A stretch of 64,000 nucleotides of DNA from Trichosphaerium sp. ATCC 40318 (lineage: Eukaryota; Protista; Tubulinea). A program made the translations under genes and the position numbers. Of this stretch, positions 1-7,064 are shown piece after piece. Positions within the stretch are counted from its first letter, which is position 1; each line of letters begins with the position of its first letter. The stretch lies in NCBI GenBank assembly GCA_038496445.1, contig JALMLS010000466.1:372001-436000 (forward strand), read 5' to 3'. The notes beneath the pieces were generated by a model. It made no database searches and was not told the origin of the DNA. It worked only from the letters and a program-made list of their open reading frames with translations.

Positions 1-594
1 TCCCTTAATTCAATATCATACCCTTTTAGCTCTAAACTTAAATCTTTGCAACGTCTTTCGCACCAACGTAGTTTCTACGCCGAATTAGCGCGTTAAAACG
101 GCTTTTTACATACTTGTTTACGTTTCGTTGGATCTGACGTTTCAGGCAACTTCTTCTCTAATTGATACCGTATCTTGGTAACTATGTCCTCTATCCTACT
201 AGCACAATCATCTATATCCTCAGTCATTGCGCTTATGTTTTGAATTTTTGCCACTTTTCAGTTGTTAAAACAGGCAGTTGAGAAAACGTTTCGTTTCGAC
301 CTTCTTTTTACGTAAACTTCGTATTTCCATGCTTTTCATATAAAATAACGAGTCGCTACATAGTTTTGAGGACTATTCCGTCCAATAGTTCATTGGTAAT
401 CCCAAAAACCCACAAAGAAATTCCACTCCGCCTTATAGTCGCCATTTTAAGAAAGAGACGCTCAAACGGGGCTCCAGGCAATGTATTACCTTTATAAAGC
501 AATGCCTTATTCTTGAACAGCAGTTCACATTGAATAAACAACGCTTAAGCCATGTACAATTAGATTTGTGTTCAAACATTATCTGGTAAGAATC

Positions 595-1412
595 ATGTTA
601 CGCTTCACTGCTTTAATTGTCCTCGTTGCTGTCGCTATTGTATGCGCTCAAGATCCTCCAAAGCCTAACCCTGCTGAAACATTCAGAGGTACAAAAACGC
701 CTTTTCGAAAGATTTTTCCATTGCTTCTCAATAACATTAAATTAATAGGAGCAAGCGTTTCTGAGATAACCTACAACGGAAAGACAGTCGTTGGTGGTAC
801 TAGTTTCGCAAAAGATGAAAAGAAAGGCATGGAAGTATCTCGCGGACGCTACGATGATAGGAACTTTGATTATGACATTCTCTTCCGCTACGACCAAGTA
901 CGTTGGGGTTTTGTTGAGATAAATTAGCTCGTTTACGCCTTTGATGGTACTAACTCTGTACATAGGGCTCTGAATACCTTGTAACTGATGTAAACAGAAC
1001 AATTTCATGTAAGAAGAGCGCTATCACTGGAACTATTCCAGCCACGTGGGCTTGGCTCGCACAAGCAAAGTTCGTTGGAAAACGTCACTTCCGTGGTGAA
1101 ACTGTTGATTTCTGGGGTGCCACCGTACGCCTTTCTTTATTGTTTCCCTTCTTTGTAATGGAACCTACGCTAACTAAGTGGTAGATTGGAACAACCAAAC
1201 ACGGCCTTGGTGTCTTTGAAAATGACCCAACACGTCCACGCATTATCGCTGAAGAGACTCCACAATTCAACGCTACCTCTCTTGTACGTTTTTTTTAATC
1301 CTGCAGCTCACGTTTTTCTTCATTCTCATATTATTTATAGATTATTGAATGGGAAACTACCTCACCTCCTCCAGCAGAATACTTTGACGTTCCAAAATCG
1401 TGCTCATCTTAG
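595..1412 (+). CDS. Secreted ependymin-related (EPDR-like) protein, multi-exon
   Basis: Signal peptide MLRFTALIVLVAVAIVCA then QDPPKP; spliced exons give ...CKKSAITGTIPATWAWLAQAKFVGKRHFRGETVDFWG... and a C-terminal YFDVPKSCSS*, matching the F-x-x-P-x-x-C end of ependymin-like proteins. Short GT-AG introns. Confidence 0.6.
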
Positions 1413-1734
1413 TTAAATAAAGAGAATTTTGACCTTAAACAAAACGTTTGAGAGGCTTTACATTACAAAGGGTTTTGTGATGTTCACGTGAACCTTTGTC
1501 GAAAAATCAAAATGATTTTCTTTGCATCCTTTTCCAGCAGCGCTTAGTTTCACTGTACTTTCCTGTGCAACTTTATCCCTCTACCTGACCCTAGTTTGTA
1601 AACATTAACAAATCAATTACCGCCTTGCTTCTTGTCACGTGTTAATCACGTGATAAATAACGAGAGAAAAAAAACTGAACAAGATGGTATATTAATATTG
1701 TTACTTTACTATTTTGGACGTTACTCAACTTGCT

Positions 1735-4700
1735 TTAGAACGACAAGTATCGACAATTAGTTAGGGTCACAGTTATATCATCATAAACATCTGGCCAATG
1801 ACATATAACAACATCAACTGTTGATGCACCTCCTGGGAAGACTCTACCCTATAAAAAAAGTTATTCAAACAATCCTGAAAGTGTTCCTAAAAAACCGTAC
1901 TGAATAAGTAAGTTTATTGTCATTCATTGGTGTAAGGTCTCCATTTGTAAAGCAGTTGTTTGGTGTACCACCATTACTTGTTGTTATGGTTGCTGTGTAT
2001 TCAATCTTATCAGAAACAGGGAATGTTGCCATAAAGTGTGTTACTACGTTGTTTGGATTATCTAAACAAATACAAAATTAGTCATAACAAAAACAAAGCC
2101 AAGGCAACAAGAAAACTACTTACTTGAGTATCTGGCGGTATCAAAAACAGCCGGAGGACAATTTACACCTGGTGCAGAGGTGACAGGTGGAGGTGCAGTA
2201 GGAACAACAGCGGTGGGAATAACAGTAGTTGGAGCTTGAGTAACGAATGGAGCAAATGTGGTTGGTGGAGGTATTGGTGTGTTATCAGGTACTTCTGGTT
2301 GCTCTCCACCTGTGAATACGGAAACCCCGCATTCTTTACACTTCTCAACAAAGTTCCATGCGAATACTTTTGATTGATCAGCAAACGCAAGTGCATCAGA
2401 GCAGCTGATACATTTATCTCGATAAATTGAAGGAATAGTGACTTGTGTTGCTGTTGGTTGTTGTCCTGTTGTTCTTGTACTCTTCTTAATCAAGCAAGTT
2501 GATAAGAATACTGGATCTCTTGGGTCCTTTGATGTGACAATCTTACTCAATGTTGTTGTTGGTTCACGTGCTTGTACAGCGTAACATAGAAGGCCTTGAT
2601 CATCGTCTGTATGTTGTGTCTTCAGTGCAGAACATTCGCTAGGATAGTATCCGTCTATGGTGTAAATACTTTCTAGCTTTGTTGGTACTATAACAATACC
2701 GTCGCAAGTTCCATCTGGAGCGTTATTACAGTCATCCAAGCAAGGAGTTGGATCGTTGGCAGTAATAAGTTTACATTCTCCATGGACTTTCTGGTAATCT
2801 GGAGCAAAGCAATGATCAACTCGCCTTAACACAAACATTAGCTTGAACAGAACATGCTATTTAAGCTAAGTAAGGAATAGAGACGTACTTGAAGGCAGGC
2901 TCTGGTACAGGATCTCCAGGAAGTGGTACACTACCATATGGACTTGGTACAAAGTCCTGGACCAAAAGAACATCGATGCAATCGAAGTAACCCTTCCAAA
3001 AGTATTGAACAACATATGACCCTGTTGCTGCACCTTCAGGTATTTTAAAGTTTGCGAAATCAATATCTTGTGCTCTATCTAATCCAAGAGCAAGCTTGAA
3101 TCTATAAACACCAAGAATCCATGGACGCTCAGTATCAGTGTATGCCATGTGTATTGCTCCAGCAATCTTAGTGTCGTTGTATTCGAATAATCTGTTGTTT
3201 TTGAAGTGCTTTGTGTATCGTTTTGTTCCATAGAAAGGCTCTCCTGGTCTTTCAATCCAATCTGGGTCAGTTGGCATTATTTCTCTCTAAACAAACGAAT
3301 GGTGAGAACCTGACTGTGTCTCGATCATGCAAAGAAAAAAGTTGCGATTTCGTACCTTGTATACGAGATCAGGATGATCGTCATTTTGTACGTTGATTTG
3401 TTCTCCACCGTTTATTTGTCTGTGATATTGTTTTACTCCAGTTATAGCTGCGCTAGCAGGACCATTCTCAAGATATTTATCGAGAATATCGGCTGAGAGC
3501 TCTCCGAGTTTGGATTCATCAGCTGCTTTCACAATTGTAAAATACGCATATGGTGTTTCACCACGCGCATCACTCCATTTGTTACCAGGGTGACCTTGAG
3601 TCCACTCAATTTCGAAACTCTGGCCAATACCGACTTGAACATGAGCAACGTCTTCTGTTTTAGGAGGACAATATGCGACTTGACTTCCTTCGTTTGTAGC
3701 ACGTGCCAAGGAGTTAACCCAGTTATGACCCATTGCGCCTGTGAAGAAAGAAGACAAGCATAGAATGCCTACTAAGAACACTATATGTTGTGATTTACTC
3801 TTTCCACCGAAAGAAAGTAGAAGAGCAAGAGACAATAATGAAGCGATAATGTTAACACTAAGATAAAGTAAGTTCGATACAAAAAAGCGGAAAGAAAAAA
3901 AAAAAGTTTGTGTCTTGACTATTTACCTTCCTGTCTTCTTCATTGCCGGGCTTGTATTCGTTGATCCTGGGGTGTCGTTTGTAGTTGATGATGGTGCTGG
4001 GGTTTCTTGTGTATTTACAGGGACTCCACTAGAGCATGGACAAAATCTTGTTATGTCGTTGTCTGTCTGCGAACATGTTGCTGGAGTATTACAAGTATCG
4101 TCTTGGTAGAAGCAGTGACTTCCTTTTTTAAAAATACCGAGTTGTGTGCAATCAGCGATGAAAGGAGAGTTACATAGTAAGTTATTATCGCTAACACCGG
4201 CACCAAGTGAATCTGCATCGTTAACACTTGTCAAAGCTGTCTCATCGCATCCTTGTCTGATGGCAGCACAAGCTACATTGCAAGATTGCCCTGGTTCTGA
4301 CTCAAGCCATGTCTTTTTTGGTAGCTCTTCGGTGGACTCTGTGAGTTCAATATCACCGGCAAGGTTAGGCCAGAAAAATGCGCCTACGTTTGCATCTCCT
4401 TCTTTGATAAGAATACGGAATGTAATCTTTCCAGTTCCTTCTTTTGGAGGCACGTATTTGAAAGTATATTCAAGTGGCTTGAAATCAGCGCTGGAATGAG
4501 TGATAACATTACCACATGCATGTTCACTAGGATCAAATCCGAAAGGAGCATGGAATAGTTCTAAGCATGCAGTCAAAGAAAGCCAAAGCGAAAGAACCAT
4601 CATAATCGAAAAGAAACTTTTTCGTATGAAAAATCTGTACGAGTTTTTCGGAAAACCAGTTTATCTCGTCAAATTCCCAAGCTAAAGCAAGTACGCACGT

Positions 4701-5450
4701 GGACTCTCAGGTAAAACAACAAACCTTCCTACTCTTGTATTTGACTCATCAACAGCGTACAATAGTAAACCACGGTACTAGTTGCATAGAATTAGTCGAA
4801 AATCATTTTTGATAGAAGCAAAAAAAATTGTGTATGGTTCAAACCGTAAAAACTTCGCGTCTTGTTACCTTTAATTTATAATCAATTACTTTGACTGTGA
4901 AGTCGAGGATTTTACCAGGTTGATAAGAAGTCATTGGATTTAGTTCTTCCCCAGCAAAGGTAATGATATCATCTGTACGTATTGTACGTGAAGCCCAAGC
5001 CATTACAGCGCTTGTATCTGTGCATTTCTTTCTTTGAACTACGCCATCTACTACAGGCCACTAGTACGGTGGTTTAGCAAGTACTCGTCTTGATTTAGAG
5101 ATGGTGTGCTTAAGAAAGAAAGAGTTCGCTCCAAAAGCGTACGTCGCTCGGTATACAGCCAAACTTTGTAAAGGTGGCGTCACAGATACCAATCACCCCG
5201 TTTGAAGCAGTTTTAGCTTCCTCTATGAGGTAAAAACACATAACTGCAAAGGCTATAGCCTGTAGATTAAATAACGTAAGCAAAGGCTCGTATACAGCTA
5301 ATAAGAGAAAACTCCGAGTTTTACGAAGGTCGTTTTTGATGATTTTCGAGATTTTTTTTTTCGTTTTATTGTTTGCTTTAAGAAGCTGCAAGCAAGTGAA
5401 AACTTTTAATGTTTACCCTAATGTACCTTTACAATATGTATTCGAGTCAT
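1735..5450 (-). CDS. Large secretory polyprotein-like gene: Reeler domain + Cys-rich module + TM/GPI-like segment + internal signal peptide + LPMO-like His-brace domain + Cys-rich/PT linker
   Basis: Exons splice in phase. Reeler motifs: YRGLLLYAVD..VGRF, C.NVITHSS, FKYVPPKEGTGKITFRILI. Junction GGA AG|gt..ag|T GTT AAC is phase-matched, giving VNIIASLLSLALLLSFGGKSKSQHIVFLVGILCLSSFFTGAMG-HNWVNSLAR, then EWTQGHPG and YVVQYFWKGYFDCIDV. Start at 5450 is tentative. Confidence 0.75.
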
Positions 5451-7064
5451 GACGTGTTGTTTAGCGCGTTAATTTTCCGACAGTTGCGGGATTTTGATAT
5501 TTCTTGACTGGTCTTTAAAAAAAAAATCCACCACAGTAGTAGGGATTTTATCGTATTCTGAAAATAAACTACAAATCCGATGGGTCAGAATACACCTATC
5601 GTTTACGTACTGTCACATATGTTTTAAAGATGCTATGTAGTAAAAACTGAAATGTGTTGCAGTTTTCCGCAAAGGTCGGCCAGACAACTATTCCTTTAAC
5701 TATAAAACAACCTTAATAAGGCCGCTAGTTTTTTTATGTGTAAAACGAAAGCACCTCGGGGATTACCCGAGTTTCACGCTGACATGTTTAGAAAAACAAC
5801 GTTAATTATTCACCAATGAAGAGTAGACTTTCTGGGTTCAAAACGTGATACTAGGGTTTTGGTCTGGTGCTTAGAACACAAAAAACTAAAAAAAAAAACC
5901 GTCATTTGGTACTGAACTAATTACATCATGTTTGTACTGACTGTTATATTATTAGTTACGTAGGTTGTTCTGCGTGGGCACATCAACAACAGGAAGTTCT
6001 TTTTTATTTGGCTAACACAACCGAAGAAGAAAATAAAAACTCGAGTTCCTACACCACGTGGCGTAAACAAGTGTTAAAGGCTGGCAACTTGTTTTCTAAA
6101 TATACTTCGTCAAAAGTGTTGTGAATTTACTTTTCATTTGGGTACCTTCACGTTGCTATCCAAAAACCTCCGAACGCTCCCACCTACACTATAGTTACAC
6201 TAAACATCCTAGTACCCATGATCGTCAAAGGCACGAAAGATTGTAAAGTACAGAAAATAAAACGAAGTTAGCTCAGCTCAGATTCTACAAGGGCTCAATT
6301 GTGTTGTAGTTACTCAACCAAGTAAAAAATTTCTCCTTGGTGTACGTATACAAATTGGGTAAAGAAACTGTCAGGATGCATTGCTTACTGAACGAATCTA
6401 ACGAGAGGTAAACGAAGCTTGTGGTTTTGCATTAACTCAAATTATTGCTAGTAGGTTTATCTTTTGGGTACCTACCATCGTGGTGCGTTACAATAGTCAA
6501 GGTCATTGCGACGTTAAATTCTTACGTTTGAAGTACTCAGTGAGGTTGTTGTCCACAAAACAAATGGCTATTGTAAACCAAAGGTACAGCAAAACCCATT
6601 TGTCTACTTTTGTAACCACGTGATCCGAATTGCTTCAGTTGTCGTACTATCTATTTTATGTGAAGAGCAATAAATGTTTGAAATGTATTTTCCTCTGCTC
6701 ATTGGTAATATTATGGATTGCACCGAGGTTTGTTTAATACTCAATTTTTGTGTGGTGCGGTTTTGGATGTTTATAATTCTTCTAACATGTAACCACATAA
6801 TCGATAGTGCTTTTAGCATAGTTTGTATAAACATACACTTGCCATTGTCAAAGCAAGCACAACGTTGCTAAGCTATTTTGTGGGCTCACTTTGAGCACAC
6901 GAGAAACACCGTTTAGATTTAAATATTCACTTCAAGGCGGGTACTTTAAACAATATTAGGAGCTAGTTGCTTTATTCAATCAGTCTAGTAAACAAACTTA
7001 CAGCCATTGAATATAGGATGTTTATTAAACAAAGAACTTGTAACACTTGTGCCAATGCAACATA

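What the first reader, a model, noticed from the sequence alone, without database searches (positions are those of the whole stretch)
2960..3930. LPMO-like histidine-brace domain buried inside a polyprotein behind an internal signal peptide
Seen: the Reeler/Cys-rich exon splices in phase (intron ~3858-3927) into VNIIASLLSLALLLSF-GGKSKSQH-IVFLVGILCLSSFFTGAMG|HNWVNSLAR, i.e. a TM/GPI-like segment, a basic loop and a second signal-peptide-like segment ending A-M-G just before His (codon 3725-3727). Downstream are W-x-x-G-H-P-G (His 3590-3592) and QYFW..YFDCIDV (~2970-3006). Established: LPMOs (e.g. AA10/AA15/AA16) need a free N-terminal His1, a second His and a C-terminal aromatic-x-x-C-x-D-V strand. 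Inference: signal peptidase cleaves mid-protein, releasing a copper His-brace enzyme with a large insertion and leaving a membrane-anchored Reeler module. This would be a two-product secretory polyprotein and possibly an unclassified LPMO family.
Basis: partly seen in the sequence, partly recalled or inferred. Interest (0 to 1): 0.88.

Follow-up and report, generated by a model that had tools for sequence, protein, structure and literature searches.

The report
Internal signal peptide unmasks LPMO-like histidine
One spliced gene of this amoeba-like protist encodes a Reeler-domain protein, a membrane hairpin and then an unannotated LPMO-like domain whose invariant first histidine sits directly behind a signal-peptidase-type site in mid-protein; cutting there would create the free N-terminal histidine that copper histidine-brace proteins need, but the cut has not been shown.

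Summary
Spliced RNA contigs put the Reeler/Cys-rich exon and the hairpin + HNW exon on one transcript; the intron is 3858-3926 and is in phase. His1 is codon 3727-3725, His2 is 3592-3590, and the YFDCIDV strand is at about 2969-2989.

An exhaustive HMMER search found 162 protein clusters at E<=0.001, with no Pfam family and no names, mostly from protist transcriptomes including leptomyxid amoebae. His1 is H in 143 of 144 mapped clusters, and His2 in all 55 rows of the full-domain alignment.

In 49 clusters His1 follows an ordinary N-terminal signal peptide. In 95 it is internal, and there residue -1 is always A, G or S and -3 is always small or aliphatic. It is usually preceded by a second hydrophobic segment and a K/R-rich loop.

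A confident AlphaFold model of a homologue matches LaX325, AA15, AA13, AA10, AA11, AA16 and AA9 best (Z 5.6-8.1). Nearly all matches start at the N-terminal His.

Cleavage, copper binding and activity are inferred, not shown, and I could not measure the brace geometry. I found no description in the searchable literature. This scan has already flagged the same architecture at least eight times on other DNA of the same genome. This copy is a divergent paralogue.

The parts
5427..5450 (-). Candidate first coding exon (MTRIHIVK). Joined to 5259 it would complete an N-terminal signal peptide, MTRIHIVKAIAFAVMCFYLIEEAKTAS. Inferred only.
   Evidence: Sequence: ATG at 5450, GT donor at 5426, AG acceptor at 5261-5260, phase 0. 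RNA contigs do not reach this far. The homologues' N-termini start with a signal peptide before S.G....CD.
3927..5259 (-). Exons 5259-5143, 5060-4869, 4777-4699 and 4560-3927. They encode a Reeler domain, a Cys-rich domain like the C-terminal domain of MGAT5, and an S/T-rich linker.
   Evidence: RNA joints 5060/5143, 4777/4869 and 4560/4699. A profile of 67 homologues' upstream parts matches residues 2-329 of this protein at E 5.7e-84. Pfam Reeler hits 29 of those 67. The model of homologue P0015:1-331 matches the F-spondin reeler domain (Z 11.9; Foldseek E 1.4e-9) and MGAT5 residues 636-741 (Z 10.6).
3858..3926 (-). 69-nt GT..AG intron joining the Reeler/Cys-rich part to the hairpin + HNW exon, in phase.
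   Evidence: Joint 3857/3927 inside a 1542-nt RNA contig with 255 nt on the shorter side.
3809..3856 (-). First hydrophobic segment, VNIIASLLSLALLLSF (stop-transfer or GPI-like).
   Evidence: Translation. 70 of 95 internal-type homologues show two hydrophobic segments within 70 residues upstream of His1.
3785..3808 (-). Short basic loop GGKSKSQH, predicted cytosolic.
   Evidence: Across 88 internal-type homologues the loop window holds 143 K+R against 27 D+E.
3728..3784 (-). Second hydrophobic segment, the internal signal peptide: IVFLVGILCLSSFFTGAMG, with A at -3 and G at -1.
   Evidence: In the internal class -1 is A76/G14/S5 and -3 is A49/V23/T9/S7/C4/G2/I1. The uncharged stretch before His has a median of 19 residues, against 17 in bona fide N-terminal signal peptides of the family.
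3725..3727 (-). His1 (residue 379 when counted from the ATG at 5241), the proposed new N-terminus.
   Evidence: H in 143 of 144 aligned clusters. Model residue 1 aligns to the N-terminal His of LPMO structures.
3590..3592 (-). His46 in E-W-x-x-G-H, the candidate second histidine of the brace.
   Evidence: 100% conserved in 55 domains. Its best local profile match in AA10 is the second-His strand, but this is not significant (P 0.1).
2954..3727 (-). LPMO-like beta-sandwich domain (about 235 residues), interrupted by intron 3287-3355. Y224 is at 2989-2987, in YFDCIDV (2989-2969).
   Evidence: The AlphaFold model is of homologue P0015:377-646 (pLDDT 90.2). VIA-align gives 6ibh Z 8.1, 5msz Z 7.7 and 4opb Z 7.3, with AA10/AA11/AA16/AA9/fusolin at Z 5.6-6.4.
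1735..2953 (-). Conserved Cys-rich extension (DHC..., VCYG..DPxDPxF.STC, CxxC pairs), a P/T-rich linker and a C-terminal module of about 100 residues. Exons are 2824-2124, 2061-1901 and 1848-1735 (the stop codon is 1737-1735). There is no C-terminal hydrophobic anchor.
   Evidence: RNA joints. A profile of 64 homologues' downstream parts matches residues 637-803 at E 7e-28. Tail hydrophobicity is low.

Best explanation
The gene makes one mRNA and one secretory precursor of about 960-985 residues.

Proposed route:
1. An N-terminal signal peptide (inferred) takes the Reeler + MGAT5-C-like module into the ER lumen.
2. The first hydrophobic segment stops transfer.
3. A short K/R loop stays in the cytosol.
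4. The second hydrophobic segment re-inserts like a signal peptide (N-in, C-out).
5. Signal peptidase cuts after A-M-G, so His379 becomes the alpha-amino terminus of the downstream product.

That product is a member of a large, unannotated protist family with an LPMO-like beta-sandwich. Its His1, its invariant His46 and probably Tyr224 would form a copper histidine brace. It carries a conserved Cys-rich extension and has no membrane anchor, so it would be released. The Reeler module would stay tethered by the hairpin.

Shown: the single transcript; the family-wide conservation of the His and of the cleavage-site pattern; the LPMO-like fold of a homologue.

Inferred: the cut, the copper binding, and an oxidative activity on a still unknown glycan.
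For: - One spliced contig spans both halves, and all introns are GT..AG.
- 162 clusters match at E<=0.001, and the whole 300-residue domain aligns.
- His1 is conserved in 143/144 clusters; the HNW..R motif, His46 and WxGYxDCxDV are 95-100% conserved.
- Stand-alone relatives carry the same His at +1 of an N-terminal signal peptide, with in-frame stops just upstream on their contigs.
- In 95 internal cases -1 is always A/G/S and -3 is always A/V/T/S/C/G/I. Pro or Gly occurs at -4..-7 in 81%, and the loop is K/R-rich (143 against 27).
- A PSSM trained only on the family's N-terminal signal peptides ranks the internal site first or second among all positions in 52 of 88 proteins.
- The model is confident (pLDDT 90.2).
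- Structural matches are dominated by LPMO and LPMO-like families, aligned from residue 1.
- Language-model neighbours are DUF7492, LPMO_AA14, LPMO_10 and AA9.
- The Atlas shape search puts an LPMO_10 cluster first.
- The full architecture is conserved: upstream profile E 5.7e-84 and downstream profile E 7e-28 against this protein.
- The defining features of the histidine brace and of LPMO/X325 proteins come from PMC10952591 and PMC7924993.
Against: - There is no direct evidence of cleavage and no proteomic data.
- The structural Z values (6-8) are in the range this aligner often gives unrelated beta-sandwiches, and Foldseek found nothing at E<=0.001.
- Profile searches against PDB sequences and Pfam find no LPMO.
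- hhalign against 111 Pfam-verified AA10 domains gives only 7.6% probability.
- The best structural match, LaX325, has no polysaccharide-degrading activity (PMC7924993).
- This copy departs from the family consensus at four highly conserved positions (P19Y, A89G, D168A, R170H) and has an extra loop after His46, so it may be functionally altered.
- The N-terminal signal peptide of this gene is inferred from an exon that the RNA contigs do not cover.
- Some 'N-terminal' relatives may be truncated gene calls.
Confidence: 0.6

Rival explanations
1. The precursor is matured in the same way, but the released domain is a copper-binding or copper-trafficking protein like X325/Bim1, not a polysaccharide-cleaving enzyme. 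The Reeler module would act as its membrane receptor or partner.
For: The top structural match is LaX325 (Z 8.1, 128 residues aligned). X325 proteins have a histidine brace but no detected polysaccharide activity, and Bim1 serves copper uptake (PMC7924993). No recognised carbohydrate-binding module is common downstream: only 1 of 64 has Laminin_G_3.
Against: Z differences below 1 are ties, and AA15 (7.7) and AA13 (7.3) are catalytic. X325 proteins are GPI-anchored, whereas this product has no C-terminal anchor and only 6 of 53 long relatives end in a TM segment. The conserved axial-type Tyr in a WxGYxDCxDV strand resembles the AA10/AA15 strand.
Confidence: 0.25
2. There is no cleavage. The two hydrophobic segments form a permanent hairpin that displays both the Reeler module and the HNW domain on the same membrane face, and the histidine works without a free amino group.
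For: The topology is equally compatible with an uncleaved hairpin. The uncharged stretch before His (median 19 residues) is long enough to span a membrane. No cleavage data exist.
Against: An uncleaved helix has no reason to keep A/G/S at -1 and a small or aliphatic residue at -3 in 95 of 95 diverged clusters, with Pro/Gly at -4..-7 in 81%. In relatives with an ordinary N-terminal signal peptide the same His is necessarily the mature N-terminus. The two forms are intermixed in the tree, with at least 6 changes forced by well-supported branches, so they should share one mature form.
Confidence: 0.12
3. The fusion is a gene-model artefact: two neighbouring genes, or a read-through.
For: None was found.
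Against: One RNA contig crosses the junction with at least 255 nt on each side, and the same joints recur in other runs for other introns. The exon with His1 has no usable start codon. 95 clusters from independent transcriptomes have the same fused layout.
Confidence: 0.02

Closest known systems
AA15 and AA10 lytic polysaccharide monooxygenases (Pfam LPMO_10), e.g. Thermobia domestica AA15 (5msz), CBP21-type AA10
   Same: - Both are beta-sandwiches that start at an N-terminal His directly after a signal-peptidase site (Z 7.7 to 5msz and 5.9-6.4 to several AA10, all aligned from residue 1).
- The N-terminal motif is similar: H-N-W-I-N-S-P-S-R-A against H-G-Y-V-x-x-P-x-S-R-A.
- The C-terminal strand is similar: W-x-G-Y-x-D-C-x-D-V against W-...-F-Y-x-x-I-D-V.
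- Both have a His in a W-x-x-(G/A)-H strand.
   Different: - There is no significant sequence or profile match.
- The loop before His2 is short (His46), with a stretch of about 100 residues, partly helical, after it instead.
- A conserved Cys-rich extension of about 200 residues follows the domain.
- In two thirds of clusters the His is unmasked from the middle of a precursor rather than from the N-terminus.
- Activity is unknown.
X325 LPMO-like copper proteins (LaX325 6ibh; Bim1)
   Same: Best structural match (Z 8.1, rmsd 3.6, 128 of 150 residues, from residue 1). Both are membrane-associated in context, and both have an LPMO fold without proven polysaccharide activity.
   Different: X325 proteins are fungal, small and GPI-anchored, with an ordinary N-terminal signal peptide. 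This family is from protists, mostly lacks a C-terminal anchor and has no sequence similarity to X325.
Signal-peptidase processing of viral glycoprotein polyproteins (bunyavirus Gn/Gc, flavi- and pestivirus structural regions)
   Same: A stop-transfer segment, a short cytosolic loop and an internal signal peptide with a -3/-1 site lie between two lumenal domains, and host signal peptidase produces two proteins from one chain (PMC7926653; the rest is established virology, from my own knowledge).
   Different: Here it is a cellular gene family. The point of the cut would be chemical, creating a metal-binding alpha-amino histidine, and not only separation of two subunits.
Reeler-domain proteins (F-spondin reelin-N domain) and the MGAT5 C-terminal domain
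   Same: The upstream module matches both folds (Z 11.9 and 10.6; Foldseek E 1.4e-9). Pfam Reeler hits 29 of 67 homologues.
   Different: No known Reeler protein is followed by a hairpin and an LPMO-like domain. The only paper that holds both words is unrelated.

Membership tests
LPMO / histidine-brace copper proteins (superfamily sense) | His is the first residue of the mature protein (free alpha-amino group) | tested here: inconclusive
   Met for stand-alone relatives: His is at +1 of an N-terminal signal peptide. For this gene it depends on an internal cleavage that is inferred from the -3/-1 pattern and has not been observed.
LPMO / histidine-brace copper proteins (superfamily sense) | A second conserved His completes the T-shaped brace, next to His1 in space | tested here: inconclusive
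   His46 is 100% conserved, and its best local match in AA10 is the second-His strand (P 0.1). Spatial adjacency was not measurable because no model coordinates were available.
LPMO / histidine-brace copper proteins (superfamily sense) | Beta-sandwich core of two sheets with 7-8 strands (PMC7924993) | tested here: met
   The homologue model has pLDDT 90.2 and about 11 strands. It matches X325, AA15, AA13, AA10, AA11, AA16, AA9 and fusolin at Z 5.6-8.1, aligned from residue 1. The Z values are moderate.
LPMO / histidine-brace copper proteins (superfamily sense) | Copper binding and oxidative cleavage of a polysaccharide | not testable with these tools
   This needs protein chemistry: EPR, ICP-MS and product analysis.
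CAZy AA9-AA17 families as defined by sequence (Pfam LPMO_10, AA9, LPMO_AA14 and others) | Significant sequence or profile match to a family model | tested here: not met
   No Pfam hit for the window exons or for 55 family domains, even at E<=10. The PDB profile search found no LPMO. hhalign against AA10 gave 7.6% probability. I do not file it in any existing AA family.
X325 (LPMO-like copper proteins) | C-terminal GPI anchor and a small single domain | tested here: not met
   This protein has no hydrophobic C-terminus, and neither do 47 of 53 long relatives. The domain is followed by more than 300 further residues.
Signal-peptidase-processed polyprotein | Internal hydrophobic segment in N-in/C-out orientation behind a positively charged loop, with small residues at -1 and -3 | tested here: met
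   the loop holds 143 K+R against 27 D+E, and -1 and -3 comply in 95 of 95 clusters. In this gene the residues are A-M-G|H.
Signal-peptidase-processed polyprotein | Two polypeptides demonstrably produced | not testable with these tools
   No proteomic or N-terminal data were accessible.
Reeler domain (PF02014) | Match to the family model or fold | tested here: met
   Pfam Reeler hits 29 of 67 homologous upstream modules. Their profile matches this protein at E 5.7e-84. The fold matches the F-spondin reeler domain. The window exons alone gave no Pfam hit because the domain is split over three exons.

The most novel reading that the evidence does not exclude
This is a widespread, so far unnamed family of protist copper histidine-brace enzymes, effectively a new LPMO family. 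Its active-site N-terminus is generated by signal peptidase cutting an internal signal peptide of a cellular polyprotein. The co-translated, membrane-tethered Reeler module (replaced in some lineages by DOMON or cupredoxin modules) acts as the enzyme's docking or electron-donating partner at the cell surface or in the phagosome.
Probability: 0.3. Interest if true: 0.9.

Novelty: new variant of a known kind. Interest (0 to 1): 0.78.

Why it matters
All known histidine-brace proteins obtain their metal-binding alpha-amino histidine from removal of an N-terminal signal peptide, which is thought to forbid placing the domain anywhere but first in a chain. This family would show a way round that rule. 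It would also give a rare cellular example of viral-style polyprotein processing by signal peptidase.

It defines a large unannotated LPMO-like family: 162 clusters at 50% identity, no Pfam model, and every member I looked up named at most 'hypothetical protein'. The family occurs in heterotrophic and marine protists, where oxidative glycan breakdown or copper handling is almost unexplored.

The conserved pairing with Reeler, and occasionally with DOMON or cupredoxin modules, offers a testable lead to the physiological partner or electron donor.

Tried and rejected
- Pfam on single exons and on homologues found nothing for the HNW domain.
- The search for homologous proteins with exon D found nothing, because of its length window.
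- A profile search of PDB sequences gave only chance hits.
- Foldseek against PDB gave nothing at E<=0.001: p53 and adhesin beta-sandwiches, with one AA9 at rank 7.
- A viral-contig scan with the family alignment found no relatives.
- hhalign against 111 bacterial AA10 domains, fetched by a DNA pattern and verified by Pfam, was consistent in its anchors but not significant.
I folded the homologue P0015 instead.
- The window's own protein is not in the protein libraries: the best identity was 45%.
- 'Two genes' was rejected on RNA evidence.
- A second copy in this window was looked for and not found.
- Literature searches (LPMO + Reeler; internal signal peptide + histidine brace; LPMO + amoeba; LPMO in protists) found no description. 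Papers on internal signal peptides were all viral.
Full report
**Gene model and transcript**

The region lies in a multi-exon gene on the minus strand. Laying public contigs on window 1700-5500 gave eight joints, all GT..AG on the minus strand. The introns are 1849-1900, 2062-2123, 2825-2888, 3287-3355, 3858-3926, 4561-4698, 4778-4868 and 5061-5142.

One 1542-nt contig of run X1 runs 2552-2823 | 2888-3286 | 3356-3857 | 3927-4295. The Reeler/Cys-rich exon and the exon with the two hydrophobic segments and HNW are therefore on one spliced transcript. Runs of a second, slightly different organism share several of the joints.

The spliced reading frame gives a 959-residue protein from the first in-exon ATG, at 5241. 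The real start is probably a small upstream exon at 5450-5427 that would complete an N-terminal signal peptide. This is inferred from splice signals and from the homologues' N-termini; the RNA contigs do not cover it.

The intron is 3858-3926.

**Family**

Pfam finds nothing in the exons, and the word-indexed search found nothing in its length window. The exhaustive HMMER search with exon D found 162 cluster representatives at E<=0.001, with a best identity of 45%. With the spliced domain the matches extend over about 300 residues, down to E 4e-43.

The sources I looked up are metatranscriptomes and metagenomes, MMETSP, and EukProt transcriptomes of the leptomyxid amoebae Rhizamoeba saxonica and Flabellula baltica. 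Every name given was at most 'hypothetical protein'. Earlier notes of this scan call the genome a marine amoeba. I did not test that.

Mapping His1 onto the hits gave 143 H and 1 D in 144 clusters, in a motif H-N-W-(I/V/L/M)-x-x-P-S-R. In 55 full-length domains the following are 87-100% conserved:
- H1, N2, W3 and R9
- H29, Q36 and F38
- E41 and W42
- G45 and H46 (H46 is 100%)
- Y85 and H102
- D168, R170 and Y173
- G213, W221, G223, Y224, D226 and D229
- a following D-H-C module

C20 and C227 co-occur at about 77%, which suggests a disulfide.

**Cleavage-site pattern**

Forty-nine clusters have the His within 45 residues of the start, behind an ordinary signal peptide. For two of them (P0003 on L001, P0112 on L002) the contig shows an in-frame stop just upstream, so in those proteins the His is necessarily the mature N-terminus.

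Ninety-five clusters have the His internal. In these:
- Residue -1 is A (76), G (14) or S (5).
- Residue -3 is A, V, T, S, C, G or I, without exception.
- 70 of the 95 show two hydrophobic segments in the 70 residues upstream.
- The uncharged stretch before the His has a median of 19 residues, against 17 in the N-terminal class.
- Pro or Gly occurs at -4..-7 in 81%.
- The loop between the segments holds 143 K+R against 27 D+E.
- A position matrix trained only on the N-terminal class ranks the internal site first or second in 52 of 88 proteins.

The upstream sequences are otherwise unconserved, so this pattern is under selection. This is the signature of a stop-transfer segment, a cytosolic loop and a re-inserting, cleavable signal peptide.

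In this gene the string is VNIIASLLSLALLLSF-GGKSKSQH-IVFLVGILCLSSFFTGAMG|H.

In a maximum-likelihood tree of 55 domains the N-terminal and internal forms are intermixed, and well-supported branches force at least six changes. Some 'N-terminal' rows may be truncated gene calls. One starred clade of five (P0112, P0127, P0069, P0051, P0056) is uniformly stand-alone.

**Fold**

I could not fold the window's own domain, because the intron prevents a single reference. I folded the homologue P0015:377-646 with a 55-row alignment that included the two window exons. The model has mean pLDDT 90.2 and pTM 0.84.

Foldseek against PDB gave nothing at E<=0.001. The exhaustive VIA-align search gave these matches:

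| Structure | Family | Z | Aligned residues |
|---|---|---|---|
| 6ibh (LaX325) | X325, LPMO-like copper protein | 8.1 | 128 |
| 5msz | AA15 | 7.7 | 117 |
| 4opb | AA13 | 7.3 | 126 |
| several | AA10 (seven entries), AA11 (two), AA16, AA9, a fusolin | 5.6-6.4 | – |

Nearly all LPMO rows align from model residue 1 to the structure's N-terminal His. These Z values are only moderate for this aligner. The concentration of LPMO families and the shared starting residue are what make the match credible.

The language-model search of the mature exon-D part gave DUF7492, LPMO_AA14, LPMO_10 and AA9 as nearest clusters (0.76-0.83, below the 0.9 level). The Atlas shape search put an LPMO_10 cluster first (TM 0.35).

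**Residue-level comparison with AA10**

To test residue-level correspondence I fetched bacterial AA10 genes with a DNA pattern and verified four of them as LPMO_10 (E down to 1e-49). I then aligned 111 catalytic domains.

hhalign of the family against AA10 gave 7.6% probability (P 0.0046). The ends anchored His1 on His1, and pG.YIv.y.W...GYyDCiDV on sG..vIlaVW...AFY.vIDV. A sub-profile around His46 found the AA10 second-His strand (tf.W..TA.H...YYITK) as its best local match, at P 0.1.

This is consistent and collinear but not significant. I count it as a lead only.

**The rest of the protein**

A profile of 67 homologues' upstream parts matches residues 2-329 of this protein at E 5.7e-84, and a profile of downstream parts matches 637-803 at E 7e-28. 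The whole architecture is therefore conserved.

Pfam finds Reeler in 29 of the 67 upstream parts, DOMON in 3 and a plastocyanin-type copper domain in 1. The model of P0015:1-331 (pLDDT 91.5) matches the F-spondin reeler domain (Z 11.9; Foldseek E 1.4e-9). Its Cys-rich half matches the C-terminal domain of MGAT5 (Z 10.6).

The downstream Cys-rich extension has no Pfam match. This protein and 47 of 53 long relatives have no C-terminal hydrophobic anchor, so the HNW product would be soluble once cut.

**This copy**

There is only one copy in this window. It sits on a long branch, weakly grouped with P0008 and P0132. It differs from the consensus at P19Y, A89G, D168A and R170H and has about 10 extra residues after His46. 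It keeps His1, E41, W42, His46, C20/C227, W221, Y224, D226 and D229. It may be a functionally shifted paralogue.

**Known or new**

The histidine brace needs the amino group and side chain of an N-terminal His plus a second His (PMC10952591). LPMOs share a beta-sandwich core, and X325 proteins have the brace without polysaccharide activity (PMC7924993).

I found no paper that links LPMO or the histidine brace with an internal signal peptide, with Reeler in this sense, or with amoebae. The papers on internal signal peptides that I found concern viral glycoprotein precursors (e.g. PMC7926653).

This scan has already noted the same architecture at least eight times on other pieces of the same genome, and follow-up agents reached the same reading. 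Those are unchecked AI notes and I do not count them as support. Everything above was tested on this locus.

**Verdict**

| Claim | My estimate |
|---|---|
| Observation confirmed; single mRNA and conserved family layout | about 0.97 |
| LPMO-like fold | about 0.8 |
| Internal cleavage by signal peptidase | about 0.7 |
| Copper histidine brace | about 0.6 |
| Polysaccharide-oxidising activity | about 0.3 |

I class it as a new variant of a known kind: a new LPMO-like family with a new route to the N-terminal histidine.

Noticed in passing
window 3927-4310 (minus); homologue P0015:208-326: The Cys-rich module between Reeler and the hairpin resembles the C-terminal domain of the glycosyltransferase MGAT5/GnT-V: 6yjr residues 636-741 at Z 10.6, and weak Pfam Glyco_transf_18 C-end hits in the window exon (E 0.0027) and in 5 homologues. 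The function of that domain is unknown to me.
   Followed up: partly
homologues in alignment A2 (upstream parts): Three fused homologues carry a DOMON domain and one a plastocyanin/azurin-type copper domain in front of the hairpin. The Reeler model also weakly resembles cytochrome f (Z 8.5) and the copper protein YcnI (Z 8.2). This may hint that the upstream module is a redox or metal partner.
   Followed up: partly
window 2479-2551: One X1 RNA contig differs from the window at five positions within about 70 nt, while another X1 contig matches exactly. This could be an allele or a very close expressed paralogue.
   Followed up: no
window 568-927 (+): An ORF with a signal-peptide-like start (MFKHYLVRIMLRFTALIVLVAVAIVCAQ...) lies on the opposite strand downstream of this gene's 3' end. 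It was not examined.
   Followed up: no
homologue P0089: It is the only family member with Asp instead of His at position 1 (VQA|DNWLNS). It may be a natural brace-less variant, useful as a control.
   Followed up: no
homologues P0008, P0020, P0025, P0132, P0141, P0150: Six of 53 long relatives end in a transmembrane segment plus a cytosolic tail, so in some lineages the HNW product would itself stay membrane-bound. They include P0008 and P0132, the rows that group weakly with this copy in the tree.
   Followed up: partly
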